This document shows, in pieces, positions 40,473-54,833 of a stretch of 64,000 bases of DNA. The DNA is taken from positions 62,001-126,000 of the IMG/VR virus record IMGVR_UViG_3300011934_000017, one strand, 5' to 3'. The notes under the pieces are model-generated. The model ran no database searches, was not told where the DNA came from, and saw only the letters and a list, made by a program, of their open reading frames with translations. Each line of letters opens with the position of its first letter. Positions within the stretch are counted from its first letter, which is position 1. The position numbers and the translations under genes are program-made.

Positions 40473-40949
40473 TCAAACAGTTTCTTCTAGCTTATCTAGC
40501 ATAGGAGATAGCGCAGAAGGCAGTTTCTTTCGTGCTTTTTCAATAGTGAACCACTTTCGTTGGCGTCGTTCGGCTTCTGGCCATTCTGTCAGTCGTTCTT
40601 TTACTTCCATTGCATACACATCAACTTTCTGCGGACGACCTGTAGCACCCTTGATATAAGCATACTTTCCAAGCTTCTTTTTAGCTTTGCCTAGAAGACC
40701 TGCCTCTTCGTATGCTTCTGTCTCAGCAGACTTGCGCTTGGTCATATCGGGCTCTACGCCGCCTTTGGGAAGTCCCCACTTTTCAGAGTGGGAGCTGGAG
40801 ACCAGTAGAACTTGAAGCTCTCCATGTTTGTTGAAACGATAGGGAATAACGCCCGATTGCTTGCGAGGCTTTCGAGACGCATTCTTTCTTCGAATCTTTT
40901 TAGGCAGTTTTTGAGTAGGCCCTGATGCTAATGAAACAGTGATTTCCAT
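40473..40949 (-). CDS. Nudix hydrolase
   Basis: WGLPKGGVEPDMTKRKSAETEAYEEAGL Nudix box; W.E...RQRKWF as in diadenosine/diphosphoinositol polyphosphate hydrolases. Confidence 0.9.
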   Translation of the reverse strand: MEITVSLASGPTQKLPKKIRRKNASRKPRKQSGVIPYRFNKHGELQVLLVSSSHSEKWGLPKGGVEPDMTKRKSAETEAYEEAGLLGKAKKKLGKYAYIKGATGRPQKVDVYAMEVKERLTEWPEAERRQRKWFTIEKARKKLPSALSPMLDKLEETV

Positions 40950-41568: not shown

Positions 41569-43086
41569 CTAGTCCCAGCGCTTGTGTAGCGCTTCTATCA
41601 GTCCCTTCTCTATTGCCTTGTCCGTCATAACAATAATATCGCCGAACGCTTCCAAGCATAGGTCCACATATCTTTGGTACTCGATACGGCCTTCGTAGGC
41701 GTTCTTATCATAACCTTTCGATAACCACTGGATAGCCTCTTCGCCGTCCAATTTGCGTAAAAGCATTTCCTTACGCAACATCTTAAAGTGGTCGCTTTTG
41801 AGTAAGTGACGATCTTCAATAGAGGCCCACTTTTTCTCAGCAGCCTGATACTCTGCCTGTGAAAGCTTATCCCGCGCTATGTCCAAAGCGCGAAGCATGG
41901 CATTACCATCAGCGTGTCCAGAAATGCGGGCAAAAGACAAAATACCGTGCATAAACCGGTTCAGATTCTGATCTATGATGACTGTGGCTGCATCTATAGC
42001 TCCTTTAATTTCAGGGCGAATATCCCCACGCACTGGAGTCAAGTCGCCTTCGTCCTTAATCGTCATGTTTTTAACAAGGGATTCTACATGCCTTTTAGGG
42101 AACAGTAAAAGACGCCGATTTTTGCTAATAGCGTTTCGGGCAGTCAGTTTAAGTCCTTCGAACGCATAAGAGCTGGTTGTAGTGCCATACTTGTAGCTTA
42201 TGAAAGACATTTTTACGTCTATACGATAGCGAAGTTCTTCCAAAAGATCAGGAATATTTTTCTTGAAATCTTTGGACGAATGGAGAACCAAATACTTATC
42301 ACCTTCAAGTTCCAATAACATTGTAGGTTCGGGACTAGCTAAGGTCGCTTCTGTTAGATCGTACTCCTTAGTGTCAATCTTATACCCGTGCTTATTGAGC
42401 CGGTGCATATCTTCCAAGAACAACGGGCCGTGACCTGCTTGATTGTACAGTGCGTTTCCATCTTCGTAGAAACGCTTATAGTGAAGCAAGTGTATCATTT
42501 CATGCAATACAACTTCGCACACACGCGGAATATCGGTCAAAGCGTGTTTAGCCAGCTTCAATGTGTAGTTAAGCTGACCGCCTTTCATCTTTAACATGGC
42601 TTGTCCGGAAAACTTGGACGCTTCTGAAAGCAGAAAGCGCACTTGGGTCGGACACTCATTCTTGAAATGTAGCTTATTGAAATAGTTATAGAGCCTAGCT
42701 ATGTCCTGCTTCTTAGGCGGCATAGGAATACTGGGAAAGAATTTCTCAGGTAAACCAGCGTCAGGATTGTGAACACGTTCACCTGTCTTAACGTCTTTGC
42801 CTCCAATGCCTGCTTTCAGACTTACACCCTTAACACGTCCCGAATATCCTGTAGAAAGACGAATAATCTTTTTGACTTCTGCTTCGGTCATAGTGAAGAC
42901 AATGCTTGGATCCGCAAGAACCGCGAGCTTCAGCTTGCCTGCATAAGTACGAATGCCATACTTCATCTTAGGTGCTAAGTCTAAATCATATTTCGGATTG
43001 TGATTTTCAAACGAAAGAGTTTTCTTACCTTGATATTGGTACCACTGGTATTTATCAATGGATACAGCAGCTAATGAAGTAAACAT
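41569..43086 (-). CDS. SprT-like zinc metalloprotease with an extra N-terminal domain
   Basis: LYNYFNKLHF...VVLHEMIH...GHGPLF...M..LN SprT signature. Confidence 0.8.
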   Translation of the reverse strand: MFTSLAAVSIDKYQWYQYQGKKTLSFENHNPKYDLDLAPKMKYGIRTYAGKLKLAVLADPSIVFTMTEAEVKKIIRLSTGYSGRVKGVSLKAGIGGKDVKTGERVHNPDAGLPEKFFPSIPMPPKKQDIARLYNYFNKLHFKNECPTQVRFLLSEASKFSGQAMLKMKGGQLNYTLKLAKHALTDIPRVCEVVLHEMIHLLHYKRFYEDGNALYNQAGHGPLFLEDMHRLNKHGYKIDTKEYDLTEATLASPEPTMLLELEGDKYLVLHSSKDFKKNIPDLLEELRYRIDVKMSFISYKYGTTTSSYAFEGLKLTARNAISKNRRLLLFPKRHVESLVKNMTIKDEGDLTPVRGDIRPEIKGAIDAATVIIDQNLNRFMHGILSFARISGHADGNAMLRALDIARDKLSQAEYQAAEKKWASIEDRHLLKSDHFKMLRKEMLLRKLDGEEAIQWLSKGYDKNAYEGRIEYQRYVDLCLEAFGDIIVMTDKAIEKGLIEALHKRWD

Positions 43087-43096
43087 GGCGTACTCC

Positions 43097-43525
43097 TTAA
43101 ACGAAAATCACGTTTGCGACTCCCGCCTGAGGAGTATGAAAACTAATAGTAACAGCATTAAAATCTACGGAAAGAGTGTCGTACAAAACACCTTCAAAAT
43201 TTTCATCTAGGATTGTAACAACGACATTCCTACTGTTCTTGTCATGCTCTATTACCCATTCAGAAGCAGGTTCGCCCATTACAAAAGAGACACCTTCCGC
43301 AGTACCTGTAGCACCTCCTCCAAGCTCAACAAAGTCAGCGAGACTGATTGAGGACAGTGCGCCGTCTACCATAGCGAGCATCTGTCCGTCTTCCAGTACA
43401 AGACCTGATAACTGTCTAGGTCCCGCACCGCGTCTCACTATGACAGATTCTTTTGGAGCATCCTCTTCTAAATAAGGACGTTTGGGAAGCTCTAGTTGTA
43501 TAAACGACTCAAATTGGTTTGCCAT
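43097..43525 (-). CDS. Virion protein with C-terminal EWVIEH domain
   Basis: SEWVIEHDKN...VTI.F..PQAG.A paralogous to the 4-10 kb domains. Confidence 0.65.
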   Translation of the reverse strand: MANQFESFIQLELPKRPYLEEDAPKESVIVRRGAGPRQLSGLVLEDGQMLAMVDGALSSISLADFVELGGGATGTAEGVSFVMGEPASEWVIEHDKNSRNVVVTILDENFEGVLYDTLSVDFNAVTISFHTPQAGVANVIFV

Positions 43526-45579
43526 TATGATAGCTCCTCTATATCTAGTTCAAGTGTTCCCGAAGTGTTAGCGCTGGCAAAATCAACGTCGCTCAACCAA
43601 ATATGAGTACCCATGGAAGCCTTGTAATTACCTTCGCTGTCTACCACAGAATAAGAAGCGCGAGCATCCCGAGTGTCGGTTCTTAACGTTAAAAGAGAAT
43701 CGGAGCCAGCATAGTTTACACGAGTATTTGTGACGTTGTAAACGGGAACGCCGATAGGAGCAATGCGAGAAAGTGCGGGCATGGTTATCGTTGTCTTCGT
43801 AAAACCAGCAACAGCATAACTTAGATCAGGTTTTTCAGTTACAGGCATACCAGAAAGACCTTGTGCTGCTAGGTCCGAAAATACTGTAACACCACGAACA
43901 TCAGAGTTCGTGATTTTCAAGTTTCGAGACCAAACTGTATCGCTTTCTTTAGTCCAAACTCCTGTCCAAGAACCTACAGGAGGCGTTAAGAATGGAGAAG
44001 CATGTAATTCTTGATCAAACTCAAGTCTTACCTTATAATCAATCCCATCGGGCGAAGAGCGTAGGTGTGGAATTGGCGTAGCTTCACCTACTTCAAGTCC
44101 TGGATTTTGGAAAGACACTAAAAAGGGCGAAATAATTCCTTGAAAGTCTGTGCGATACACATACCAATTTTCACCGTTCTTAGATAGAGGAGCGGGACCA
44201 GTCGTTGAGCCTACAGAACCATCAGAAGGCCATGTTGCCCCATCCCAACCACCAACACTTCCCGTAGATAGATCAATAAACGTCGCTCGGCCTAACGCAG
44301 CAGGATAAGCAAAATATCCGTAACCCGCCGGAGCTTCTAAGAAGAAGTCCTGATCGTTTGTAGAGGAAAGTGTCTGTGCTAAAGAATCGATACCGGAGAC
44401 AGAAAGATTAGGAGACGTAGATGCTCCATAAACAGGAAGACTGGATATCTTCTGAGAACTGCCTCGAAGCACAGAATTTTCTATAACGAGAGACAGCATT
44501 GAAGGTGCGATACTGGAGATAGGAATATCAAAGACCCCTTCAAAGTAGGTATCGTTAGAGTCTTTCCAAGCACGAATTGTTATGCCTCCGGAAAGACTAT
44601 AAGTTGCCACATCCACAGTCAACGTGCGCGAAGAAAGAATAGCAGAAGGAGAACCGTCAAAAGTACCATGATCGAAAGAAAACTCGCTACGCTCTGCGTT
44701 CAGGTACGAAATAGTAGCCAAACACGTATCGTTAAGACCCAGAGCATCCTTGTTGTTACTGAAAGCTGAAAGTGTCACGGTCACTTGCGGAACTGTTTGA
44801 TCAAGGCGTATTGGATCCGACTCGAAGCTAGTTCCTTTTGTTCCTAATTGATTTTCAGCATACAGTGAGATCCTATTTAAACCAGAAGCATTGGATGCCT
44901 CAACAACACCGCTAAAGACTCTGTATCCATCAGAAGAACTATTAGCGGCACCTAAAGTTAAAGTATAGTTGCGAGAAGTGGCAGCACCTAAGTTTAAAGC
45001 TTTTATTTCGACAGCAGAGTTCTCAACAGAACCCTCGACAGAAATAAGGTCGCCAGCCTTAACTGCGGTCTGTACTCCGGGAAAAGCTGTCACGCTCAAG
45101 CTTGTAATAACAGGTCCGCTACCTTCGACGCTAATACTAATAGAAGCTTCAGTCCCTTGAGAGGACTTTAACGTTAAAGTACCACTTTCAGACATTTCAA
45201 TAGGTACGCTACCTGTAAACGAGTTCGGACTTCCTTCTACCCCTTCTACATTTGCGTAGCTTAATAAAACATCATTCATCCATACCGACACTTCAGGTGC
45301 ATCAAACGCGATTTTACTATCGCAGATAAAACCTACAGTAATAAAAGCAGTGTCCGAAACACAACTGTTGATTATTTTGTTAGGCGGTGTGGTGTCTTTA
45401 TACTGTTTGTTACCTACATTGCCTTCAGAAGTGGGCATAACGCTAGTGATGAATATTGGACGCTGTGAGGTATCGTTAAATACTTTATCCAAGTCCTCTT
45501 TTCGAATAGCATGATCGGGTTCCGTAGGAGCATAATGCAGACGTAAGAAGCCTAATGCTTCCAAATTGTGTGCTTTCAC
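43525..45579 (-). CDS. Virion structural protein, Ig-like, with one YGYFAYP domain (GTG start at 45579)
   Basis: GGAGAG RBS before GTG; AGYGYFAYPAALGRATF...GGWDGATWP...WYVYRTDF shared with 25083..30989. Confidence 0.65.
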   Translation of the reverse strand: MKAHNLEALGFLRLHYAPTEPDHAIRKEDLDKVFNDTSQRPIFITSVMPTSEGNVGNKQYKDTTPPNKIINSCVSDTAFITVGFICDSKIAFDAPEVSVWMNDVLLSYANVEGVEGSPNSFTGSVPIEMSESGTLTLKSSQGTEASISISVEGSGPVITSLSVTAFPGVQTAVKAGDLISVEGSVENSAVEIKALNLGAATSRNYTLTLGAANSSSDGYRVFSGVVEASNASGLNRISLYAENQLGTKGTSFESDPIRLDQTVPQVTVTLSAFSNNKDALGLNDTCLATISYLNAERSEFSFDHGTFDGSPSAILSSRTLTVDVATYSLSGGITIRAWKDSNDTYFEGVFDIPISSIAPSMLSLVIENSVLRGSSQKISSLPVYGASTSPNLSVSGIDSLAQTLSSTNDQDFFLEAPAGYGYFAYPAALGRATFIDLSTGSVGGWDGATWPSDGSVGSTTGPAPLSKNGENWYVYRTDFQGIISPFLVSFQNPGLEVGEATPIPHLRSSPDGIDYKVRLEFDQELHASPFLTPPVGSWTGVWTKESDTVWSRNLKITNSDVRGVTVFSDLAAQGLSGMPVTEKPDLSYAVAGFTKTTITMPALSRIAPIGVPVYNVTNTRVNYAGSDSLLTLRTDTRDARASYSVVDSEGNYKASMGTHIWLSDVDFASANTSGTLELDIEELS

Positions 45580-45595
45580 TTTTGACTCTCCAAAT

Positions 45596-45621
45596 AAAAA
45601 AGGGGCCAAAAGAGGCCCCTT
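45596..45621 (-). terminator. Rho-independent terminator
   Basis: Minus strand AAGGGGCC-TCTTTT-GGCCCCTT-TTTT. Confidence 0.8.
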
Positions 45622-45629
45622 ACGATAAA

Positions 45630-45896
45630 TTACGGTGCATAGTGTCGAAACATTTCTTCCGTGTCGTCGCAAGTGATGACTTGCTCACCGTTCAACACAG
45701 CAGCTTTTACAGATGCTCCAGCATTTTTGCATTTGTACCTGTAATCCGCATCATGTTGTAAGGGGATGAACATTGCGGTATTTTTAGGTCCAGAAGCGAG
45801 CACGTACACATGCTTTTCGCCAAGAAAAGAAACCACACGTTGTGAAATCTTAACTTCATTCAAATTTTCTTTTGTTAAATTAGTTACCATATCCAC
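45630..45896 (-). CDS. Hypothetical protein
   Basis: 88 aa; AAGGA RBS; operon spacing. Confidence 0.55.
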   Translation of the reverse strand: MDMVTNLTKENLNEVKISQRVVSFLGEKHVYVLASGPKNTAMFIPLQHDADYRYKCKNAGASVKAAVLNGEQVITCDDTEEMFRHYAP

Positions 45897-45906
45897 TGAT
45901 TCCTTG

Positions 45907-46269
45907 TTATTGCATAGTCACTTTAAAAGAGATATTACCTTCTCGGATCACCTTGGGGAGTTGATTCAAGGCTTGCTGCTCTGCTTGCTCTAACGTGTCC
46001 ATCTTATCGAAAAACGGCTGCTTCTCACGATCCGACAATGTGTTTCCATTTACCATGGGACGTACTTTACGCATCTGATCGCGGATGTGCGCAAGACGTT
46101 TTTCCCGCTCATTTACAAATCTAGGAAATACGTCAGAAGCATCGGGATGTTGAAGGCAAGCCTTTAACTCGTTTGAAGTTAACGCTATATAACTAACCGA
46201 AGAAGATTGCTCTGCCTTCGAAATTAAACTTTTTAATTCTAGTAACGGGTCGTCATAAACGATACGCAT
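45907..46269 (-). CDS. Hypothetical protein
   Basis: 120 aa; operon spacing. Confidence 0.55.
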   Translation of the reverse strand: MRIVYDDPLLELKSLISKAEQSSSVSYIALTSNELKACLQHPDASDVFPRFVNEREKRLAHIRDQMRKVRPMVNGNTLSDREKQPFFDKMDTLEQAEQQALNQLPKVIREGNISFKVTMQ

Positions 46270-46278
46270 AGGTTCCCC

Positions 46279-46476
46279 TCAGTGTAGGTAGGTGGAAGCG
46301 TTCTCTGAAAGAAAACGCGAGTTAGGAGGCTTAGGAAATATTCTAAAGCCTCGATACAGATGGCGATCAAACAAAGGATCGACAGACTTTATATTCTCAG
46401 TCATGGCAGGATCGTTTTGTTTGGCTCCCCAAATAGATAACGTATTCAAATAACGTCTTTCTTCGAAAAGCTTCAT
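46279..46476 (-). CDS. Hypothetical protein
   Basis: 65 aa; TAATG coupling to the gp5-like gene. Confidence 0.5.
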   Translation of the reverse strand: MKLFEERRYLNTLSIWGAKQNDPAMTENIKSVDPLFDRHLYRGFRIFPKPPNSRFLSENASTYLH

Positions 46477-47288
46477 TAACCGTTAGTCTCCGAGCGCGTA
46501 CATTGGATGCGATGCAACAGGTCTATCGTTTCCCAACGATTCTTTTTAACGCGAACCCAGTCGTTTCCATCAATAACAGTCTTTCGATTGCCTTTGATAT
46601 GAGTAGTCTGGTCGCCTGTTATATAGGTGTGCTGATTACCTGAATATCCTTTAGCTAATAGACCTTTAAAAGGCACACGCTTTGCTGGCTTGGCACTCAA
46701 ACCACTTAGAACGGTCTCTGGAGCATTTAGCAGATAGCCCGGAATGTCGCCTTTCGAACCTGACACAGTTAGCTGTTGGTTACCGATGATGTACTGATTC
46801 ACATCACCAAGAAAGGTCATGTTCAGATCGCCAGGATTATTGAAAAACACCTCATTGGTGCGAGTATCAATAATCATGTAGCAGCCGTTAGAGAACTTGA
46901 ATACGGCACGATCTGGATAGTTCACGTCTTGGTGTTCAGGAAGTGCAGTCTGATCATCGACAGTGTAAGTAGTCCACACAGGTCGATGTGGATCACCAGT
47001 AGGAAACTTCAGTCCCACTTTATGATCTTTCTTAGGAACCCACGCCATGCCGGAACGTTCGGTAGAGTTGCCTCCAGGATTATATGCGCCATCGGGATGA
47101 TTAAACTCCGGTATCGCCCACGGTAAATCACCGTCTGGAATACCATCGAACACGCCCTCAATGCGAGCTTGAATACGACAGATTTTTCTCTGGTCAAAAT
47201 TGTTTACGACTTTTGCTTCGTAAACCATGCGAGGATCAAGCCCTTGTTTTGACAGGTACTTCGTCGCATTTATTGTTCCTCCTGCCAT
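46476..47288 (-). CDS. Baseplate central spike, T4 gp5/VgrG-like (OB fold + beta-helix, no lysozyme domain)
   Basis: KVVNN.D....RIQARI.G......LPWA...VP....V...F..GDP.RP; C-terminal I.G[ND] repeats. Confidence 0.8.
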   Translation of the reverse strand: MAGGTINATKYLSKQGLDPRMVYEAKVVNNFDQRKICRIQARIEGVFDGIPDGDLPWAIPEFNHPDGAYNPGGNSTERSGMAWVPKKDHKVGLKFPTGDPHRPVWTTYTVDDQTALPEHQDVNYPDRAVFKFSNGCYMIIDTRTNEVFFNNPGDLNMTFLGDVNQYIIGNQQLTVSGSKGDIPGYLLNAPETVLSGLSAKPAKRVPFKGLLAKGYSGNQHTYITGDQTTHIKGNRKTVIDGNDWVRVKKNRWETIDLLHRIQCTRSETNG

Positions 47289-47291
47289 GAT

Positions 47292-47501
47292 TCACTCCAG
47301 AATTATTTGAACGAGTTCTTTTAGCTCTGAAATGGAGCTAGCCGAAGAATAATGGAAAAGACTTTCCATAACGCTATCCACATCAACTTGGTCTTGCTGT
47401 TTTAGCAGTAAAGAGGCTGCGGCGCTGATAGAGCCTGAGTTTAACAGATTAGCGGTTGAACGCACTACTTCCAATTCTAAGTGAGCATTTTTAGGTGTCA
47501 C
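47292..47501 (-). CDS. Hypothetical protein
   Basis: 69 aa; 4-nt overlap coupling. Confidence 0.45.
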   Translation of the reverse strand: MTPKNAHLELEVVRSTANLLNSGSISAAASLLLKQQDQVDVDSVMESLFHYSSASSISELKELVQIILE

Positions 47502-47863
47502 ACTTTTTCGCCTTTCGCTGTCCAGTACAAGGCTAAAGCTCGATTTTCAATAGGTAACATCAACAGGTTTTTGTAATACTTAGAAGCGGCTTCACCTGTC
47601 TGTCTTAGAGACCTGCTCATGCCTACGTAAGTTAGCGCTCCTGTTTCTGACATAGCGTTGGTAACATAAAGCTTGAGAGAATCTTCAGGCAAAGAAGTTT
47701 CGCAAGCGGCAATTAAGTTACTGTCTAAAACAGCAGGTTGCCCTTCTACGTGAATAATAGAGCCTTGTTGTTCCAATTCTTTATTCAGAATAAACTTGGA
47801 TAACCAGGCAGCTTTTTCATTATCGCTCATTACTCCCCAGCCCATTATTTCAAAATCTTCCAC
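47498..47863 (-). CDS. Hypothetical protein
   Basis: 121 aa; AGGAG RBS. Confidence 0.55.
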   Translation of the reverse strand: MEDFEIMGWGVMSDNEKAAWLSKFILNKELEQQGSIIHVEGQPAVLDSNLIAACETSLPEDSLKLYVTNAMSETGALTYVGMSRSLRQTGEAASKYYKNLLMLPIENRALALYWTAKGEKV

Positions 47864-47874
47864 AATGCTCTCCT

Positions 47875-48270
47875 CTAACTGAAAGAAAAACGTTCACCAC
47901 CTCTGCGAGTCAACGTCTCTTCGATATCTAGGTCATGCTTTTCCATTTCGCGTATATCAAACTTAACAGCATCGCAGCTATTTTTCTCTAGCTCTGTAAA
48001 ATTGTTTATGTCAATCGCTAAGAAGCCGCCGTCTTGGCCTCGATGTAACACAGATACCGTCCAAAGAACGTTCAGTTTGTTTTCATCTACGAAAGTCACA
48101 GGTTTAACACCTATGAAGAAATCGCATACCTCCGTAATATAGACACAGGAGTTTAAAAGATCATTGCGATGTTTTTTCAGATCGATTTTAGCAGCAGGAT
48201 CGTCTGTGGCTACACCTTGTCTAATCATAACGCCAAGATTTAGATGGCGTAGAAATTCAGAATGAAGCAT
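47875..48270 (-). CDS. Hypothetical protein
   Basis: 131 aa; AGGA RBS. Confidence 0.55.
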   Translation of the reverse strand: MLHSEFLRHLNLGVMIRQGVATDDPAAKIDLKKHRNDLLNSCVYITEVCDFFIGVKPVTFVDENKLNVLWTVSVLHRGQDGGFLAIDINNFTELEKNSCDAVKFDIREMEKHDLDIEETLTRRGGERFSFS

Positions 48271-48280
48271 GACTATTTCC

Positions 48281-51200
48281 TTAGAAAGATCGCGTATTTT
48301 TCTTTGACTGTTTTGGAGTCACAGAGCCGTGAGTAAGAGGAGTTTTCTTATTCGCTGTGATATCACCAAGTGCTCGGGCTATTTCACGATTCGACCGCTC
48401 ATTAGCTTTCTTCTGATCTGGCACAAACTTCTTTTTACCTGTTTTGGTGCGACCTACAATCTCTTCGTCTTCACCAAAGTCACGATTCAACATTGAAGGT
48501 CTACGGCCCATCTTTTGAGCAAGCACAGAGGAGCGCGTTCCTTCAGAGTAGTTCATAAGCTCGCGTAGGTCTTCATTGCCGCCAGAAGCGAAAGCACTTC
48601 CGTCATCACCACCTTCTTTGGGTCCGTACTTCGATTTAATCTCACCTACTTTCTTACTGTACTCTGACACCTTCTGCAAAAGCTCTAGGTCATCATCAGC
48701 ATCGGAAAGCAACGTGTCCAAGTTAAAGCCACCTGCCGCTGCAATAGCGCGAAGAGGAACGGGTACACCTTTTTCGGATAACGTAGTAAGCATTTCCATG
48801 TACTGCGTATCACCTTCAGGCTTTAGCTGCTTAGACCAGTGAACGTTAGGTATCAACAATCGAGTACCATCAGCCATCTTATCCAGATTAGCTTGCATGT
48901 TATCTGTATCAAGCAAGCCGTCTTTTCGAATCAGTTTACCACGTTCGTTGATTGTGTAGCCATTAACAAGGCTAACAAGCGGGAAAATCTTGTTGTAGAA
49001 AAGCTTGCGTGTCAGCATATCGCGGAATGCACGGATACTTTCAATGAATACCGTCAAGCTTGAGTCAGCAGTGTTGTGAACCACGAGACCATTCGCTACA
49101 AATGCAGGCTCTACTCCCGGCTGCATGGATATGTCGTAAACGTGTTGTTTACCGTTATCGTTGATAGATTTGATAGGAACAACCATATAACGAAGAGCAA
49201 CTAAGTCCATTACTCTACGATACATGGAAGGCGAAATTTGCTCCAATCTCTCAAGCAGACCGTTGTAATCGCCATTGTCGTATTTATCGTACATGAAGTT
49301 TTTACCGCACATGGAGTACATGTTTTCTCGGCAATTACGAAGTACGATAACTTGACCAGAATCATTCAAATAAGCTACACCTCCTCCGGCTGGACCGACT
49401 TTTCGTGCTTCCAAGAAGTCTTTAAGGAAGCGGTTAGGAAAACCATAGTCTTGTCTTGGTTTAACTCCGCGGTATTTACTCATATCCAGCTTTTTGGAAC
49501 ACAGATAAGTCTCAATCTTATTCCAGAATAGACGACTATCCGTGAAACTAAGCTCTACAAAAGATTTCCTACGGTGAGACAGAACACCGTGCGCAAGCAA
49601 CATGACCTGCACTTGTTCCATAAGTGTCGGGCTAGCAGAAGAAAAGGCAATTCTATCGCTGACATGTGCATCACCTTCCATGTACGCAGCCAAGAAAGCT
49701 AGTTGACTTTTCTCGTCGGCCTGCAAAACCGTCCAAGGTATTTCCTGATTATAGCTAGGCAGTTCACTTCCTTTTCGAGTATAAATAAAACCAAGTTCTT
49801 TGATCCAATGAACGATAGTTTTACTTCCTACTTCAAGAACATAGCAGTCTGCGTTTGCAACACCTGTCTTACCTTGAATATCGTAGTCGTCTGCTTTGGA
49901 AATACGTTTACGTACAGTAGCTTTGACTCCGAACAAATCTTTGAAGAATTTGGCTGTACGCTTGAGGAGCTTTTTGTCTGAGTTGGTGATAGCAAGCTTT
50001 TTGTCGCCTATTAGGTTACCTTCACTCACTAGCAAACCTAATAAGTACGCAAGCTTTGGTGTCATTTCAACAGGTTGCTTTAGATGTTTGCGCTTTCCAC
50101 GACGTCCTACTAAAGAGGTCTGATCTGTTAACTCGACAAGCAAACGATCGGAACGAACAAGTCCTTTTGTAGGAATACAAAGCGGATCTCCTAAGTTTAA
50201 GCTACCTGCTTGGATCCATTCTGTAGTTCCAGTGTCGTTAAAAACTAGGAATGGATGATTAGCAGTAGAAGCAAGTTCGTTTCCTTTTGAAGTAACGACC
50301 TTCAAAGTGTCGGCATAACCACTATACTTCCAAGAAGAGGTCTTCTCGTTTGCGTAGCGAGACTGCACAGTAGCGTCTAAGGGTACTTCAATGTCTTTTA
50401 AGGACTCGGAAGTATCTTTAGGTAGATGTTTTTCACCTACCATTTGATCAATACGAAGTAACCCCTTATTAGTAGGGATCAAAGAGTCGCCTGTTAAGCA
50501 AGCGTAGTTAGCCTCACCTGAGAGGAATGACTCACTGATACCGAGGGCGCGTAGCTTAAATGTAGCGGTGCTGTCCCATGTGTCTGTTACTTTCCAGAAG
50601 TCACCGCCTTGGCGAATTTCATCGGTTGTTACACCGAGGCGTGTTGCGATGATTGCGCCAAGCGGATCACTGTCAGCATTCATGAACAGGTCAGTCATGA
50701 ACTCCATGTCCGCTACAGTAGGTTCCCACTGGTCTCCATCACCCAAAGAAATATGAAGTATACCGCGCTGCCTACGACTAGATTCAACAAGCGTACCGCG
50801 AAACAGATTCTTTTCAATCAGGTAAAGAGGCAGTACGCGACGATAGAACGATACGCCTTCACCACTCGTGAAAGTCTTACGTGGAATATACACTGTAGTC
50901 AGCGGATCCAACTCAAGTGCATCTTGTTGGAGAAGCTGAACAACGTCTTCACCTAAACGGCTCTTCAAGTTTTGCATTCGAGGTCCGTCAGAACTCAACG
51001 ACGCTTGAACGCTCTCTGGAATTGATACTGTGATGATAGGGTCTTGACCGTAGAACGGCAGACTATCTATCTTGGCGTTATCATTACGATGCGGCATCAT
51101 ATCGAAGAAACGCTTGGAGCTTTTGTTGTATAACAGACTTCCGATGAATGCACCGTCTACCAAGTGGTCAGTAGATAGGTGAGGAAGAATAGTACGAATG

Positions 51201-51613
51201 TTAAGGCGTTCTACGGTTTCCCGAAAAGAACGCATGGCGCGTTTGTCTGTAACACCGCCGATTGTGAAGTCGGAGAACGGAAGCGTAGACAGCATATCGA
51301 CCGCACTTCCGCATACCGCATCGTTGTAATAAATATCTCGGTAAAGACGGTTAACTAGCTTCTTTTGTTCGAGGTCTTCCGAGAACACAATGTCTTTCAG
51401 AAGAGGATCAACGTCTACCTCAATAGGCATTTGGCTGACACTGGTGTTTTGCATACTTGTACCGGCGGCAGTTGCAGACCAATCTTTAGCCTCTGCGGGA
51501 ACACGGCTCTTACCTGAGCTATTTGTTCCTAGACTAGCTTTTTTGCCTGGAGGTGCCACCTCTTGCTGATCCGAAGAAGTTGCATACGTGGGTTTTCGCT
51601 TAAAGCGCATCAT
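48281..51613 (-). CDS. Probable portal protein containing an intein (~634 aa after splicing)
   Basis: Two genes downstream of the large terminase; YRDIY..D..CGSAVD, GVSFYRRVL and LRALGISESFLSG patterns are portal-like. Confidence 0.6.
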   Translation of the reverse strand: MMRFKRKPTYATSSDQQEVAPPGKKASLGTNSSGKSRVPAEAKDWSATAAGTSMQNTSVSQMPIEVDVDPLLKDIVFSEDLEQKKLVNRLYRDIYYNDAVCGSAVDMLSTLPFSDFTIGGVTDKRAMRSFRETVERLNIRTILPHLSTDHLVDGAFIGSLLYNKSSKRFFDMMPHRNDNAKIDSLPFYGQDPIITVSIPESVQASLSSDGPRMQNLKSRLGEDVVQLLQQDALELDPLTTVYIPRKTFTSGEGVSFYRRVLPLYLIEKNLFRGTLVESSRRQRGILHISLGDGDQWEPTVADMEFMTDLFMNADSDPLGAIIATRLGVTTDEIRQGGDFWKVTDTWDSTATFKLRALGISESFLSGEANYACLTGDSLIPTNKGLLRIDQMVGEKHLPKDTSESLKDIEVPLDATVQSRYANEKTSSWKYSGYADTLKVVTSKGNELASTANHPFLVFNDTGTTEWIQAGSLNLGDPLCIPTKGLVRSDRLLVELTDQTSLVGRRGKRKHLKQPVEMTPKLAYLLGLLVSEGNLIGDKKLAITNSDKKLLKRTAKFFKDLFGVKATVRKRISKADDYDIQGKTGVANADCYVLEVGSKTIVHWIKELGFIYTRKGSELPSYNQEIPWTVLQADEKSQLAFLAAYMEGDAHVSDRIAFSSASPTLMEQVQVMLLAHGVLSHRRKSFVELSFTDSRLFWNKIETYLCSKKLDMSKYRGVKPRQDYGFPNRFLKDFLEARKVGPAGGGVAYLNDSGQVIVLRNCRENMYSMCGKNFMYDKYDNGDYNGLLERLEQISPSMYRRVMDLVALRYMVVPIKSINDNGKQHVYDISMQPGVEPAFVANGLVVHNTADSSLTVFIESIRAFRDMLTRKLFYNKIFPLVSLVNGYTINERGKLIRKDGLLDTDNMQANLDKMADGTRLLIPNVHWSKQLKPEGDTQYMEMLTTLSEKGVPVPLRAIAAAGGFNLDTLLSDADDDLELLQKVSEYSKKVGEIKSKYGPKEGGDDGSAFASGGNEDLRELMNYSEGTRSSVLAQKMGRRPSMLNRDFGEDEEIVGRTKTGKKKFVPDQKKANERSNREIARALGDITANKKTPLTHGSVTPKQSKKNTRSF
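49073..50500 (-). mobile_element. Intein with LAGLIDADG homing endonuclease (476 aa)
   Basis: YA|CLTGDSLI block A; T.NHPF block B; LAYLLGLLVSEG and FLAAYMEGD motifs; VYDISM block F; FVANGLVVHN|T C-terminal junction. Confidence 0.93.
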
Positions 51614-51666
51614 TTAAATAAACCTCCAAGGCTTTCCTGTACTTTTTGAATGAACGTGATACTCAT

Positions 51667-51674
51667 TATTTACA
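51667..51674 (-). promoter_or_regulatory. TGTAAATA box upstream of the portal gene
   Basis: Intergenic; one mismatch from the T4 late promoter TATAAATA. Confidence 0.45.
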
Positions 51675-51676
51675 CC

Positions 51677-52564
51677 TTATACCCAGTCAGCGCTTAGCTC
51701 CCACGCTTTGCAACTCCAATAACCCGGTGTTGTTTTGTCTTTCTTGGTGCTACATTGATGGCGTGCCATGAAAGACTTTCGACGCGCAGGATCGTCACGT
51801 TTAATCGACATATTAGGATCGCCGAACTTGACTTGAATGATGTTTCCCTTATCGTTTTTCACGTACACGCCAAACTTCTTTTTGCTTCCCTTAGGCAGAC
51901 GAAACGGCTTTTCTAGCGTTACTTGCTTTCCCTTGTATTCACCAGAACTTGCTTCAACTGAACTTGCGGTCGATTCGTCTATACGCATTGCAGGCTTTAG
52001 AGGTTTGATCTTACGTGCAAAATAACTGCCTTGAGAAGCGGCTCTTTCGAGCGACGTAGCCTCTTTCTTCGACACTAGCTGATATTCCCAATGCGCTCCA
52101 TTGTGGAACGTTACATACAATATCTCTTTCTTCGGGTCGTGCACCAGTCGAGAGAATACGGAGCTATCCGCAGTAAGGACTGTGTGGCCTTCAGTTGTTT
52201 TCCTAGACTTGCGCTTTTCCTTAGGGTCTTTGCCTCCTATAAAAGGAAGTACCTTGTACCGGCTAATCTTTCCTTCGTACCCCTTAGAGTTCGCAATGAT
52301 ACGTCTAGCATCCGTGATATCGAGCCGAAATTGAACAGACAGATTAGACTCGTCCAGAATATAAGTAAAGCCACGGAAGTTTTTAACACCAAACTTCTCG
52401 CCTTTTGTTATCTCTAGCTCATACTCTTTTCTGTCAGAACCTACAACGTCAAGAACAAACTTTCGGCCTACGTATTCCAACCAACGGTACTTTCTTGGGT
52501 CCCTCTTTTCAGAAGCTAGTGCTTCAAATTCAGGTAATTGTGAAAAGGATCGCATATTAAGCAT
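51677..52564 (-). CDS. Three-domain protein: unnamed N-domain + KTSC + DUF6321-like basic C-domain
   Basis: KTSC: SSVF..L.HDP....LYVTFHNG..WEY..V......S.GSYF; C-domain YKGKQVTL.KP...KKF.VYVKN.KG....V.FGDPNM...RRKSF.ARH.C....GYWSC.AW. Confidence 0.7.
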   Translation of the reverse strand: MLNMRSFSQLPEFEALASEKRDPRKYRWLEYVGRKFVLDVVGSDRKEYELEITKGEKFGVKNFRGFTYILDESNLSVQFRLDITDARRIIANSKGYEGKISRYKVLPFIGGKDPKEKRKSRKTTEGHTVLTADSSVFSRLVHDPKKEILYVTFHNGAHWEYQLVSKKEATSLERAASQGSYFARKIKPLKPAMRIDESTASSVEASSGEYKGKQVTLEKPFRLPKGSKKKFGVYVKNDKGNIIQVKFGDPNMSIKRDDPARRKSFMARHQCSTKKDKTTPGYWSCKAWELSADWV

Positions 52565-52597: not shown

Positions 52598-54787
52598 TTA
52601 GCGACCCCTCTTCCACGTGCCTAGTTGTCCATCAAATGACGTTCCGGTACCGCTACCTACCGACTTTCCTCCTCCAGAACCTAGCTTAGACACGGCGAAT
52701 GCTTGAGGACGAAAGCGTTCATCTTCTTCATCGGCTTCTGGAACTGACATATACTCATAATAGCGTTCATTGGTGAGTCCCCATACAAGAAGACAAGTAG
52801 CGCGCCACAGATCGTCTGTTAGACCATCACCTTTGTTTACTTGGGTCCCTGTATCTTGTACCGTCAAAGTCTGTAGGATAAAATGCTCGACAGGCTTTCC
52901 CTTGTAGCAAAGCGGGTAATTGTCTGTGTCAATGATAGCCATAGCATCATCAACAGAAGAACCTTTAACAGAAGGGCGAGGCAACTTAATTGCGCCCGAC
53001 TCTAAAAAAGAACGAGTTAATCCTATGTCTTTGTACTTTAATGAATACTGTTCCGCAAGTATGTCAAGACCTTGTTCAATATCTTGTAGGATTTTGATGC
53101 TATTCCAACGATCAGCAAGAACGACCTGAGTGTTCTGGGCTAGGCACACTTCTTCCAAAATCTCTTCATTGATCATGGTATAGTTAAGAGGAATACCTGG
53201 CTCCGGCATAATCTCAAATAACAGGTTGATAACAATAGTGCCTTCATCATCCAGGCGCCCTACAGCACAGGCAAAGCTGTTATTGGTATAACCAGCATCA
53301 ATCGCAAGCATAGTAGGTTTACGACATTTACCTACACGATCCGCTTCAGCCCACTTAGTAGCACTGCCTTGCCTCTTTCTGTTCTTCACTATGTCCCGAA
53401 GAATGATCTTGTTCGGCTTATCTGTCAATGCGTTTTTCAACCACACCTTATTTGTGATGTAAGGATTAGCTGAAAGTGGAGGATTAGCACCGTAATCTCG
53501 CTCCGCGTCAAGAGGGTTCTTTTGATACTCTGACACGATGACTTTACTGTTACGAGGCAGTGTCGGATTCACTTCCCATGTAGGACGCAAAATGCCGTAC
53601 ATAGACTCGGAATCCATAGACTGTCGAACCAGCTCACATATCTTGTCTCGCTGACTGGACGGAGACGATACGTTCATGGAATAACCAGTCAGTATGTTAT
53701 CAAAGCCTGCTGCGATAAGCCTATCTGCGGCACCTCTCACAGTCAACAAAGAGCGATCCAATGCCGTGTAGACCTCCCGCGCACTGGTCTTTACTTTCTT
53801 ACTGTCTGCTGCGTTGTCGAACCAGCCTATTTCATCAATGCCTGCAAAGATACGTGTACGACCACGAAGAACTCGTTTGTCAGGACCTGCAGGGTAAAAC
53901 ATCAGACTACGTGGGCGATAAACAACGAAGGTATCATTGAATTTTAGAAGTTGTTGTCCATAACGTTCTTCGTAGTATTTTAAAAGGCCGTGGTACTGCT
54001 GGAACCATTTTGATTCTACCAGAGTACCGTAGTAGAACTCCCACAGTGTTTCTTTTGCTTGCGCGTATGTCAGAGCTACGAACGTACCGTGAAGCATGGT
54101 AGACCCAGCAATGCCGTATACGTCGTTAGGCTTCTGCATTTTCAGTACGCGATGGGTCAAATACGGAGTCAGCAGGCCGCCAGTAGCAGCGGACTTACCA
54201 GAACGCTGACCTGCACACACCGCAAGCTCTTGGTAGAAAGGCATCAGACCACTACGTACAAAGTCAGACTTTCGACCCTTGCACGATGGACATATACCGT
54301 GTTCTAGCAGGCATACTTTCTTTTCAAAGTGGACAAACGTATCATCCGGCTTGTGAGTCTCAAGCAAGTATGAATTATCCGAACATACAGGACACCACTC
54401 ACCAAAGACCACTATACCCCAGACAAGCTGCTCCAGAAAAGGTGTCATAACCGTTCCTGCAAACTCGTCTTTCATTACCCATTCATAAAAGTTTTTAGCT
54501 AACGGCATATCCCCGTCATCAATTTTGATATCTTTAGGTACGAGGTTGTTTTCATCTAGCACACCTCGCACCATGGAAGCGATATCAACTTCCTTCATCA
54601 TCATATCTTCACTGAAGTTCGCTATGCCGCGTCTTGCTTTACCGCTTCCCAGGGATTCTGGATCAAACTCTTCCATATTTCCGCTTTTTGCTTCTTTTAG
54701 CTGACGCAGAAAATCAAACGGATCTTCACCAGGATCGGGAAGTCTTTCGTAGTTCAGCGTTTTTGGTTCTCGATTTTTTATCTTCAT
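52598..54787 (-). CDS. Terminase large subunit (start adjusted to MKIKNRE at 54787)
   Basis: GQRSGKS Walker A, FAGIDEIG Walker B, LAIDAG nuclease motif, C-terminal DDL; CxxC...CxxC insert. Confidence 0.85.
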   Translation of the reverse strand: MKIKNREPKTLNYERLPDPGEDPFDFLRQLKEAKSGNMEEFDPESLGSGKARRGIANFSEDMMMKEVDIASMVRGVLDENNLVPKDIKIDDGDMPLAKNFYEWVMKDEFAGTVMTPFLEQLVWGIVVFGEWCPVCSDNSYLLETHKPDDTFVHFEKKVCLLEHGICPSCKGRKSDFVRSGLMPFYQELAVCAGQRSGKSAATGGLLTPYLTHRVLKMQKPNDVYGIAGSTMLHGTFVALTYAQAKETLWEFYYGTLVESKWFQQYHGLLKYYEERYGQQLLKFNDTFVVYRPRSLMFYPAGPDKRVLRGRTRIFAGIDEIGWFDNAADSKKVKTSAREVYTALDRSLLTVRGAADRLIAAGFDNILTGYSMNVSSPSSQRDKICELVRQSMDSESMYGILRPTWEVNPTLPRNSKVIVSEYQKNPLDAERDYGANPPLSANPYITNKVWLKNALTDKPNKIILRDIVKNRKRQGSATKWAEADRVGKCRKPTMLAIDAGYTNNSFACAVGRLDDEGTIVINLLFEIMPEPGIPLNYTMINEEILEEVCLAQNTQVVLADRWNSIKILQDIEQGLDILAEQYSLKYKDIGLTRSFLESGAIKLPRPSVKGSSVDDAMAIIDTDNYPLCYKGKPVEHFILQTLTVQDTGTQVNKGDGLTDDLWRATCLLVWGLTNERYYEYMSVPEADEEDERFRPQAFAVSKLGSGGGKSVGSGTGTSFDGQLGTWKRGR

Positions 54788-54802
54788 TTTTGCCACCAAA
54801 CG

Positions 54803-54825
54803 AAAAACCCGACACAAGGCCGGGT
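54803..54825 (-). terminator. Probable terminator hairpin immediately before the terminase gene
   Basis: Minus strand ACCCGGC-CTTGT-GTCGGGT-TTTT. Confidence 0.6.
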
Positions 54826-54833
54826 AAGAATTT

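What the first reader, a model, noticed from the sequence alone, without database searches (positions are those of the whole stretch)
42790..52500. Unnamed ~90-aa N-terminal domain shared by the SprT protease and the KTSC multi-domain protein
Seen: SprT residues ~12-99 (about 42790-43055) KYQWYQYQGKK...KYDLDL....KYGIR...IVF.M.....KKIIRLSTGYSGRV......IGGKDVK align with residues ~25-115 of 51677..52564 (about 52220-52500) KYRWLEYVGRK...EYELEI....KFGVK...VQF.L.....RRIIANSKGYEGKI......IGGKDPK. In both proteins the domain directly follows the SLAA/ALAS leader and precedes unrelated C-terminal domains. Inference: a modular head-localisation, DNA-binding or ejection domain onto which effectors are swapped, like the paralogous head-protein families of other jumbo phages.
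Basis: partly seen in the sequence, partly recalled or inferred. Interest (0 to 1): 0.78.

Follow-up and report, generated by a model that had tools for sequence, protein, structure and literature searches.

The report
Named phage domain behind a portable leader
The shared N-terminal region of the SprT protease and the KTSC protein is real but already catalogued (Pfam PF20294, KMPT-N); what matters more is the short leader in front of it, which looks like a shared tag that may send several enzymes into the phage head.

Summary
ORF A (SprT, 41569-43086, minus strand) and ORF B (KTSC, 51677-52564, minus strand) share about 100 N-terminal residues (BLASTP E = 8e-10).

The domain is not unnamed. 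Both proteins pass the curated cut-off of Pfam PF20294, 'KTSC and Metallopeptidase N-terminal fusion domain'. The 220-kb phage genome, a relative of PaBG, Lu11 and RSL1, has six such paralogues. A profile search found 317 cluster representatives, and the best 150 fall into at least 12 architectures (SprT, KTSC, charged tails, and Tad6 anti-Thoeris in relatives).

The domain is a basic (median pI 9.6) small beta-barrel, weakly SH3-like, with no confident structural relative.

In front of it sits a separate, disordered leader ending in S/A-hydrophobic-S/A-A. The same tag heads other proteins of this phage lineage:
- topoisomerase IB,
- a NUDIX hydrolase,
- an SNF2-like giant protein found in PaBG virions by mass spectrometry,
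- the head maturation protease, as S-x-S-F.

It also matches x-x-S-A at the likely capsid-protein maturation site.

Best reading (inferred, about 0.45): the leader is a prohead-targeting and cleavage signal, like the T4 capsid targeting sequence. KMPT-N would then be a basic handle on proteins carried inside the head. No proteomic proof exists.

The parts
43066..43086 (-). ORF A leader, residues 1-7 (MFTSLAA), ending in the S-L-A-A tag
   Evidence: pLDDT is below 50 in the full-length model. The start codon has a good ribosome-binding site. The tag is conserved across the family.
42787..43065 (-). ORF A KMPT-N domain (PF20294), residues about 8-100
   Evidence: Pfam 35.9 bits against a cut-off of 28.9. 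pLDDT is above 90. pI 9.8, net charge +9.
42367..42714 (-). ORF A SprT/Spartan-like metalloprotease domain, residues about 125-240. HEMIH is at residues 195-199 (nt 42490-42504), with a third His at 219.
   Evidence: PF10263 at 37 bits. The class profile hits human Spartan 6mdw at E = 1.5e-14. Foldseek also finds 6mdw, E = 2.4e-4. H195, E196, H199 and H219 are invariant.
41572..42345 (-). ORF A C-terminal region: a beta-rich domain (residues 248-348) and a helical domain (358-504), function unknown
   Evidence: Full-length AlphaFold2 model. No Pfam match and no PDB fold match. The region is conserved within the SprT class.
52511..52564 (-). ORF B leader, residues 1-18, ending in A-L-A-S
   Evidence: Predicted coil with pLDDT about 70. 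It aligns with the leaders of the other paralogues.
52220..52510 (-). ORF B KMPT-N domain (PF20294), residues about 19-115
   Evidence: Pfam 36.8 bits. AlphaFold2 model has pLDDT 89, with nine strands and one helix. pI 9.6.
52001..52165 (-). ORF B KTSC domain (PF13619), residues 134-188
   Evidence: Pfam 48.2 bits against a cut-off of 25.
51701..51943 (-). ORF B C-terminal domain (phrog_7595), residues about 208-288. It occurs as a stand-alone small protein in many marine phages.
   Evidence: PHROGs E = 5e-14. tblastn hits in pelagiphages and roseophages at 45-62% identity.
37279..37308 (-). The same leader tag (MLRGFVSLSA) at the N-terminus of topoisomerase IB (gene 35590-37308)
   Evidence: PF01028. 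18 of 25 homologues begin with ...S-[LI]-S-A-[VT], and four more begin with SLSS, SLSR or TLSR. PaBG gp84 begins MHTSLSA.
40923..40949 (-). The same leader tag (MEITVSLAS) at the N-terminus of a NUDIX hydrolase (gene 40473-40949)
   Evidence: PF00293. The Erwinia phage Y3 NUDIX protein Y3_120 begins MMLNVSLSA.
48281..51613 (-). Context: portal protein gene (with an intein), immediately downstream of ORF B
   Evidence: 59% and 51% identity to the two halves of the PaBG portal. Intein_splicing and LAGLIDADG_3 Pfam matches.
52598..54868 (-). Context: large terminase subunit gene, immediately upstream of ORF B
   Evidence: 47% identity to the PaBG terminase large subunit. The order terminase, KMPT-N/KTSC, portal is kept in PaBG.

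Best explanation
Shown: the shared region is Pfam PF20294 (KMPT-N). It is a basic small beta-barrel of about 85 residues, tied by a flexible linker to varied C-terminal parts. In this phage it heads six paralogous proteins:
- A, the SprT/Spartan-like protease;
- B, KTSC plus a phrog_7595 domain;
- C to F, with strongly acidic or basic low-complexity tails (all four lie outside the window).

In front of the domain is a separate, disordered leader of 7-18 residues ending in S/A-[LIV]-S/A-A.

Inferred: this leader is a portable signal for entry into the prohead, and probably the site where the phage's head maturation protease cuts. It would work like the T4 capsid targeting sequence, which is removed by gp21. 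The tagged proteins would be built into the prohead core, trimmed after the final Ala, kept in the DNA-filled head, and probably released into the host with the DNA.

KMPT-N itself is probably a common basic handle. It may bind the packaged DNA or the very acidic scaffold-like protein encoded next to the capsid gene. The C-terminal part would do the work: proteolysis in A, unknown in B, charge effects in C to F, and inhibition of Thoeris in relatives.
For: Identity of the domain and size of the family:
- Pfam identifies KMPT-N in A and B.
- Six paralogues are found in the genome. 14 of 15 pairwise comparisons are significant.
- A profile search finds 317 representatives. Among the best 150 hits, the domain is at the N-terminus in 131.

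The leader is a linear motif, not part of the fold:
- It is predicted as coil or low confidence in both models.
- Its spacing from the domain varies.
- 25 of 150 members lack it and start exactly where the leader would end.
- 50% of members with an upstream stretch carry S.S[ASG] against 1% expected; 79% carry a relaxed form against 5% expected.
- When the domain is internal, the motif still sits directly before it, and it recurs near the N-terminus of those long proteins. They carry up to 4 copies each (15 of the 17 at least one), against 0.2 expected.

The tag is portable across protein families:
- Topoisomerase IB: 18 of 25 homologues.
- NUDIX hydrolase here and in phage Y3.
- The SNF2-like giant protein: here and in at least four of its 11 homologues, and in PaBG gp202.
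- The head maturation protease family, as S-x-S-F.

Link to the virion:
- PaBG gp202 (MGSLFTLNSLSA) and gp83 (…LLEAVAAK) are virion proteins confirmed by mass spectrometry (PMC7412058 Table 1). Tail proteins gp257, gp261 and gp263 lack the tag.
- In five of seven capsid proteins an x-x-S-A aligns at one column (HRDY3 has ATAS, RSL1 VLKA). In PaBG it is residues 69-72, so a cut there would remove 72 of 368 residues (19.6%), matching the reported loss of about 20% of mass.

Gene position:
- All six genes lie 3-33 nt behind the preceding gene (C counted from its annotated start).
- Family members keep positions inside assembly modules: terminase, X, portal (here and PaBG); next to the portal (RSL1); prohead protease, X, scaffold-like protein, capsid protein (Y3); between the two tail-tube genes; and after the head-tail connector.

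Other support:
- The domain is basic in 91% of members.
- In relatives, a Tad6 anti-Thoeris domain lies between two tag sites, upstream of KMPT-N.
Against: - There is no direct proteomic evidence. PaBG gp89, gp107 and gp217, its three KMPT-N proteins, are not among the 14 virion proteins identified. That study read only Coomassie-visible bands, so this is weak evidence against.
- No cleavage site has been determined experimentally in any phage of this lineage.
- The capsid-protein site is inferred from an alignment of a poorly conserved stretch. RSL1 (VLKA) and HRDY3 (ATAS) fit only loosely.
- Within this one genome the tag is only about 2-fold enriched at N-termini (p about 0.06).
- The protease has no detectable relative in Pfam or the PDB, so its specificity cannot be argued from homology.
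- Stand-alone KMPT-N proteins exist (RSL1 ORF210; P0120 and P0122). The domain must therefore have a role of its own beyond carrying cargo.
- A basic SH3-like barrel would also suit a cytoplasmic protein that binds nucleic acid.
Confidence: 0.45

Rival explanations
1. KMPT-N is a module that binds nucleic acid or recognises a target, on enzymes that work in the infected cell's cytoplasm. SprT would act as a DNA-dependent protease and KTSC as an RNA-binding protein. The domain would have no role in the virion, and the leader would have some other function.
For: - The domain is strongly basic: median pI 9.6, net charge +6.
- It shows weak SH3-like resemblance, and SH3-like barrels often bind nucleic acids.
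- Spartan-type proteases need DNA binding for activity (established knowledge; the Spartan match is).
- Iyer et al. 2021 proposed that phage SprT-like peptidases target host proteins and that KTSC proteins act in translation (PMC7824862).
- No KMPT-N protein was among the 14 PaBG virion proteins.
Against: - It does not explain why a disordered leader with the same sequence sits on unrelated proteins, including the prohead protease and a virion protein confirmed by mass spectrometry.
- It does not explain why the leader flanks domains inside long proteins.
- It does not explain why family members keep positions inside head and tail assembly operons.
- DNA binding is compatible with being packaged, so this rival partly overlaps the main explanation.
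Confidence: 0.3
2. The leader motif is a processing site for the phage's own SprT-like metalloprotease, or an autoprocessing site, and not for the prohead protease. KMPT-N would be the docking domain through which the protease meets its paralogous substrates, with no connection to the capsid.
For: The protease and its putative substrates share the same N-terminal domain. The catalytic residues of ORF A are intact. Long relatives look like polyproteins, with motif sites between their domains.
Against: - In Erwinia phage Y3, none of the four KMPT-N proteins has an SprT-like domain by Pfam; one (Y3_142) has an HELAH string. Three of the four still carry the tag as SESA.
- SprT-type members make up only 20 of the 150 best hits.
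- The tag also occurs on the prohead protease family and at the likely capsid-protein maturation site, which points to the head protease.
Confidence: 0.1
3. The similarity between A and B is due to chance or amino-acid composition.
For: Identity is only 28%.
Against: BLASTP E = 8e-10 with composition adjustment. Both proteins pass the curated Pfam threshold. The profile finds 154 proteins at E <= 1e-10 among 1.84 billion. Foldseek finds the family members in BFVD with TM up to 0.73.
Confidence: 0.01

Closest known systems
Pfam PF20294, KMPT-N ('KTSC and Metallopeptidase N-terminal fusion domain')
   Same: It is the same domain, with the same two fusion partners that gave the family its name. 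A and B are members by the curated score. UniProt already labels the PaBG, Y3 and Yoloswag proteins with this name.
   Different: The Pfam model covers 66 positions. Conservation extends about 20 residues further towards the C-terminus, and a separate leader lies upstream. The library of papers searched holds no description of the domain's function.
Phage T4 capsid targeting sequence on internal proteins (IPI, IPII, IPIII, Alt), removed by the prohead protease gp21 (established knowledge)
   Same: A short N-terminal leader is shared by otherwise unrelated proteins and ends in a short protease-type motif. The cargo includes enzymes and an anti-defence protein (T4 IPI*; here Tad6 in relatives). 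The cargo is basic. The genes sit among head genes.
   Different: There is no sequence similarity. The last residue of the motif is Ala (or Phe) rather than Glu. No Peptidase_S77 is present. Here a folded 85-residue domain follows the leader in one cargo family. Packaging and cleavage are not shown.
phiKZ-type jumbo phages: paralogous inner-body and head proteins with propeptides cut by gp175 at S/A/G-x-E (established knowledge)
   Same: A jumbo phage with paralogous families of non-capsid proteins that share N-terminal regions, and head proteolysis reported in the relative PaBG.
   Different: A different phage lineage (PaBG/Lu11/RSL1-like), a different motif, and no homology to phiKZ proteins detected.
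Herpesvirus assemblin cleavage sites, (V/L/I)-x-A then S (established knowledge)
   Same: The proposed site has the same shape: an aliphatic residue two positions before a terminal Ala.
   Different: This is analogy only. The fold of this phage's head protease was not determined, and a profile of it finds no relative in the PDB.
SprT/Spartan DNA-dependent metalloproteases (PF10263; PDB 6mdw)
   Same: The middle domain of ORF A is a member, with HExxH and the third His intact.
   Different: It carries the leader and KMPT-N at the N-terminus and two unknown C-terminal domains. Dependence on DNA and the substrates are unknown.

Membership tests
Pfam PF20294 KMPT-N | Whole-protein score at or above the curated gathering score (28.9 bits) | tested here: met
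   A 35.9 bits and B 36.8 bits. In six-frame searches, C scores 31.6 and D 30.9; E (27.0) and F (18.1) fall below the cut-off but are clear members by the family profile.
Pfam PF20294 KMPT-N | N-terminal position, fused to KTSC or a metallopeptidase, in phages | tested here: met
   A is KMPT-N plus SprT-like; B is KMPT-N plus KTSC. Of 99 representatives scanned, 20 carry SprT-like and 11 carry KTSC.
SprT-like / Spartan metalloprotease (PF10263) | HExxH zinc site with a third His, and a domain score above the cut-off | tested here: met
   37 bits against a cut-off of 25.6. H195, E196, H199 and H219 are invariant in 20 sequences. The profile hits 6mdw at E = 1.5e-14.
SprT-like / Spartan metalloprotease (PF10263) | DNA-dependent proteolysis | not testable with these tools
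   This needs a biochemical assay.
KTSC domain (PF13619) | Score above the gathering score | tested here: met
   B residues 134-188 score 48.2 bits against a cut-off of 25.
T4-type capsid-targeted internal proteins | A short N-terminal leader shared by unrelated cargo proteins | tested here: met
   The tag occurs on the KMPT-N family, topoisomerase IB, NUDIX, the SNF2-like giant protein and the prohead protease.
T4-type capsid-targeted internal proteins | The leader is removed by the prohead protease at a consensus that is also used in the major capsid protein | tested here: inconclusive
   x-x-S-A aligns in five of seven capsid proteins at the position that fits the roughly 20% mass loss in PaBG. 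No cleavage site has been mapped.
T4-type capsid-targeted internal proteins | The protein is present in mature virions | tested here: inconclusive
   PaBG gp202 and gp83, which carry the tag, are in the virion. The three PaBG KMPT-N proteins are not among the 14 bands identified.
T4-type capsid-targeted internal proteins | Homology to the T4 system (gp21-type protease, capsid targeting sequence) | tested here: not met
   Peptidase_S77 is absent from the genome. The leader has no similarity to the T4 capsid targeting sequence. The resemblance is of mechanism only.
SH3-like small beta-barrel fold | A significant structural match to solved SH3-like domains | tested here: inconclusive
Tad6 (PF25188, type I Thoeris inhibitor) | Presence of the domain in this window or genome | tested here: not met
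   No match in the genome. The domain is present only in relatives, fused upstream of KMPT-N.

The most novel reading that the evidence does not exclude
Jumbo phages related to PaBG, Lu11 and RSL1 may use one short N-terminal tag (hydrophobic-S-hydrophobic-S-A) to load a whole toolkit into the capsid for delivery with the DNA. The tag would be read and cut by their so far unclassified head maturation protease. The toolkit would include a Spartan-like protease, topoisomerase IB, a NUDIX hydrolase, an SNF2-like giant protein, the KMPT-N proteins and, in some relatives, a Tad6 anti-Thoeris domain released from a polyprotein. KMPT-N would be the basic handle that holds part of this cargo on the DNA or the scaffold.
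Probability: 0.4. Interest if true: 0.75.

Novelty: new member of a known kind. Interest (0 to 1): 0.5.

Why it matters
The domain is catalogued, so the finding as written adds only new members to a known family.

The leader is the more useful result. If it is a capsid-targeting and cleavage tag, one could read directly from sequence which proteins these little-studied jumbo phages carry in the head and inject. That list would include a pre-made inhibitor of Thoeris defence and DNA-handling enzymes.

It would also define the specificity of an unclassified family of head proteases. And it would offer a simple tag for packaging foreign proteins into such phages, as the T4 capsid targeting sequence has been used.

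Tried and rejected
- **Literature.** A search for 'KMPT-N' found nothing. The supplement of the jumbo-phage survey is not held. The PaBG paper does not mention a protease or a scaffold. Searches for Y3 and RSL1 proteomics, and the Matilda preprint, gave nothing usable. The original Tad6 paper is not in the library.
- **Fold of KMPT-N.** No significant match in the PDB or in AFDB clusters. BFVD returned only family members. A faint Atlas feature hit to 'IpIV internal head protein' (score 0.61) is too weak to use.
- **Protease.** Peptidase_S77 is absent. The head protease has no Pfam or PDB relative, even when searched with a 47-sequence profile.
- **Tad6.** Absent from this genome.
- **Tag enrichment across this one proteome.** Weak: about 2-fold, p = 0.06. 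The case therefore rests on conservation across families.
- **Apparent tags rejected.** The DNA ligase tag (MLTLNLSLSS) is not conserved in PaBG or Y3, and its start overlaps the preceding gene. The thymidylate synthase match ('SVSA') was not counted as a tag: it has no support from orthologues.
- **SprT as the enzyme that processes the leader.** Unlikely, because the Y3 KMPT-N proteins lack an SprT-like domain yet three of the four carry the tag.
Full report
**1. The observation**

The window is bases 62001-126000 of a 220,237-bp viral record with direct terminal repeats.

BLASTP aligns A 2-100 with B 13-115 at 28% identity, E = 8e-10. With the N-terminal 125 residues alone, E = 1.2e-12. The coordinates given (42790-43055 and 52220-52500) are the right codons. 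The similarity is real.

**2. The domain already has a name**

Both proteins match Pfam PF20294, 'KMPT-N: KTSC and Metallopeptidase N-terminal fusion domain'. A scores 35.9 bits and B 36.8, against a cut-off of 28.9. A also matches SprT-like (PF10263) and B also matches KTSC (PF13619). These are the two fusions the family is named for.

In the viral structure library, UniProt already labels the proteins of PaBG, Erwinia phage Y3 and Yoloswag with this name. No paper in the searchable library uses the name. The jumbo-phage survey by Iyer et al. mentions the SprT-like peptidases and the KTSC protein only briefly and separately (PMC7824862).

**3. The family in this genome**

A search of the whole genome finds six open reading frames with the domain:
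- A and B, inside the window.
- C (genome 4652-6157), D (198923-200854), E (183743-185077) and F (185093-186721), all outside it.

A profile built from the six finds no further copy among 913 ORFs. C has a second, internal copy. 14 of the 15 pairwise comparisons are significant.

Ribosome-binding sites support the start codons. The true start of C is its 13th codon, giving MFFVSIAA.

C to F have no recognisable C-terminal domain. Their tails are extreme in charge: C -49, F -20, D +32 and E +25, with Pro/Lys-rich repeats and runs of Asp/Glu.

**4. The family elsewhere**

A profile of the seven copies, searched against 1.84 billion representative proteins, finds 317 at E <= 0.001 and 154 at E <= 1e-10. 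Among the best 150:
- The domain is at the extreme N-terminus in 131 and internal in 19; 42 have two copies.
- Clustering the parts outside the domain gives at least 12 multi-member classes plus singletons.

Pfam scans of 99 of them find KMPT-N in 95, SprT-like in 20, KTSC in 11 and Tad6 (PF25188) in 10. Tad6 is a type I Thoeris inhibitor that binds ThsB (review PMC13728456). In those roughly 800-residue proteins, Tad6 lies upstream of an internal KMPT-N. This genome has no Tad6.

Cultured phages with the domain are:
- PaBG, with 3 genes;
- Lu11;
- HRDY3, with 3 matches;
- Erwinia phage Y3, with 5 matches in 4 genes;
- Alexandra, with 5 matches;
- NCTB, with 4 matches;
- RSL1, with 1 gene.

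All share this phage's type of major capsid protein.

**5. Structure**

With a 120-sequence alignment, AlphaFold2 models B residues 1-115 at mean pLDDT 89. Residues 1-22 are coil (pLDDT about 70). Residues 27-107 form nine strands and one helix.

Fold searches found no confident relative:
- Foldseek against the PDB: nothing significant, best E 0.44.
- AFDB clusters: best E 0.03, all TM below 0.45.
- BFVD: only family members.
- The ESM Atlas also returns SH3-like models, TM 0.45-0.59.

So the domain is a small beta-barrel that is at most loosely SH3-like and appears to be specific to phages.

It is consistently basic: median pI 9.6, net charge +6, and pI above 8.5 in 91% of members.

The full-length model of A has mean pLDDT 85.9 but pTM 0.46. 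The leader (residues 1-7) and the linker (100-110) fall below pLDDT 50. In order, the protein reads: KMPT-N, linker, SprT domain, a beta-rich domain, a helical domain. The only fold match is human Spartan.

The metalloprotease looks active. HEMIH plus a third His are invariant, and the class profile hits Spartan at E = 1.5e-14.

**6. The leader is a separate, portable tag**

Within the KMPT-N family:
- Nearly all members with an N-terminal domain begin with Met, a few residues, then hydrophobic-S-[LI]-[SA]-A. Examples are MFISLSA, MLISLAAA and MYVSLSA. The conserved DPxxYxW follows 3-12 residues later.
- Of the 125 representatives with at least 9 residues upstream, 62 carry S.S[ASG] in that stretch (1% expected), and 99 carry a relaxed form (5% expected).
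- 25 have no leader and begin exactly where the leader would end.
- When the domain is internal, the motif again lies directly before it (FESISA, VESVSA, QRSLSA).
- It recurs near the N-terminus of those same long proteins (YQSLSS, FQSLSA). They carry up to 4 strict copies each (15 of the 17 at least one), against 0.2 expected.
- Second, tandem copies of the domain lack it.
- Three of the four Y3 KMPT-N proteins use the form SESA.

Outside the KMPT-N family:
- Topoisomerase IB of this window begins MLRGFVSLSA, and PaBG gp84 begins MHTSLSA. 18 of 25 homologues begin this way, down to about 31% identity. One example is MFISLSAV, identical to KMPT-N leaders. Four more begin with SLSS, SLSR or TLSR.
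- A NUDIX hydrolase begins MEITVSLAS here and MMLNVSLSA in Y3.
- The SNF2-like giant protein carries the motif in its first 50 residues in PaBG gp202 (NSLSA), here (FSSLSA), and in at least four of its 11 homologues (FSSLSA, FSSLAA, AALSA, FSSFSA).
- The head maturation protease (genome 11243-11986; phrog_18299, E = 3e-92) carries S-x-S-F at the N-terminus in most of the 120 homologues listed.

**7. Links to the head**

- PaBG gp202 and gp83 (which begins MLIKINLLEAVAAK) are virion proteins identified by mass spectrometry. The same paper reports proteolytic processing and a loss of about 20% of the capsid protein's mass (PMC7412058).
- In an alignment of seven capsid proteins, a poorly conserved stretch holds x-x-S-A in one column in five: TMSA here, APSA in PaBG, VTSA in NCTB, SQSA in Y3 and STSA in Alexandra. 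The fit is looser in HRDY3 (ATAS) and RSL1 (VLKA).
- In PaBG the motif is residues 69-72. A cut there would remove 72 of 368 residues, or 19.6%.
- Tail proteins of the PaBG virion lack the tag.
- All six genes here lie 3-33 nt behind the preceding gene (C counted from its annotated start).
- Lu11's authors annotate the matching region as driven by middle/late promoters.

Each architecture class keeps its genome position across phages:

| Class | Conserved position | Seen in |
|---|---|---|
| KTSC | between terminase and portal | this phage and PaBG |
| KMPT-N alone | next to the portal | RSL1 |
| Two-domain (Y3_142) | between the prohead protease and the scaffold-like, decoration and capsid genes | Y3 |
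| Two-domain (like C) | between a giant tail-fibre-like gene and DNA ligase | C here, PaBG gp217, Y3_149, two metagenomic contigs |
| Short class | between the two tail-tube genes | Y3 and a metagenomic contig |
| Like E | after the head-tail connector | this phage and a metagenomic contig |
| SprT or Tad6 | the same slot beside the thymidylate kinase and MmcB genes | SprT here and in PaBG; Tad6 in NCTB and a metagenomic contig |

**8. Interpretation**

Shown:
- the identity of the domain;
- the six paralogues;
- the diversity of architectures;
- the basic, flexibly tethered barrel;
- the existence and portability of the leader tag;
- its presence on a prohead enzyme and on a verified virion protein.

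Inferred:
- the tag directs proteins into the prohead and is cut after its final Ala by the head protease;
- the KMPT-N proteins are internal head proteins, probably ejected with the DNA;
- KMPT-N binds DNA or the acidic scaffold-like protein.

The closest working analogy is the T4 capsid targeting sequence with its internal proteins. It is an analogy of mechanism only: there is no homology, and no S77 protease is present.

The main rival is a cytoplasmic role in binding nucleic acid. It fits the charge and the Spartan precedent, but it leaves the tag unexplained.

The lack of KMPT-N proteins among the 14 PaBG virion bands counts mildly against packaging.

**9. Verdict**

'Unnamed' is wrong. 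The modular picture is right. Head localisation is plausible, but it probably belongs to the leader rather than the domain, and it remains unproven.

As a finding about the domain, this adds new members to a known family. The leader tag is the part worth following up.

Noticed in passing
window 48281-51613 (minus strand): The portal gene is interrupted by an intein with a LAGLIDADG homing endonuclease. The PaBG portal aligns to residues 2-371 and 833-1097. The inserted block starts at Cys372 (CLTGDSL) and ends ...VVHN followed by Thr.
   Followed up: partly
window 35590-37308 (minus strand) and 40473-40949 (minus strand): Topoisomerase IB and a NUDIX hydrolase carry the same N-terminal tag as the KMPT-N proteins (MLRGFVSLSA; MEITVSLAS), and it is conserved in their homologues. 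They may be packaged in the head, as topoisomerase IB is in poxvirus virions.
   Followed up: yes
window 33230-34369 (plus strand): The thymidylate synthase is 379 aa against a Pfam model of 266 positions, so it carries about 110 extra residues. The nature of the insertion was not examined.
   Followed up: no
window 51701-51943 (minus strand): The C-terminal domain of ORF B (phrog_7595) occurs as a stand-alone small protein in pelagiphages, roseophages, Methylophilales phages and Nitrosopumilaceae viruses (45-62% identity). Some records call it 'HVA1 family'.
   Followed up: partly
genome 11243-11986 (outside the window; locus L048): The head maturation protease belongs to a large family (220 homologues) with no Pfam or PDB relative. 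It has an invariant His, a Ser and a CxxC...CxH zinc-ribbon-like motif, and a conserved S-x-S-F at the N-terminus.
   Followed up: partly
genome 190367-196381 (outside the window; locus L064): This is a 2004-residue SNF2-like helicase protein. Its PaBG orthologue gp202 is the largest virion protein found by mass spectrometry. It carries the tag within its first 50 residues, as do PaBG gp202 and at least four of its 11 homologues.
   Followed up: partly
loci L055 (phage NCTB BN7874_171) and L058 (metagenomic contig); protein P0062: These proteins of about 800 residues join a Tad6 anti-Thoeris domain, a tag site, KMPT-N and a 400-residue tail. They sit in the genome slot that the SprT protein occupies here, and they look like polyproteins.
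   Followed up: partly
genome 12600-14618 (outside the window; locus L017): A 672-residue protein with long Asp/Glu runs and two Cys-rich zinc-ribbon-like repeats lies next to the protease and capsid genes. PHROGs calls it an 'ATPase' (phrog_20988). It is more likely a scaffold or core protein.
   Followed up: no
window 25083-30989 (minus strand): An ORF of 1968 residues was not examined.
   Followed up: no
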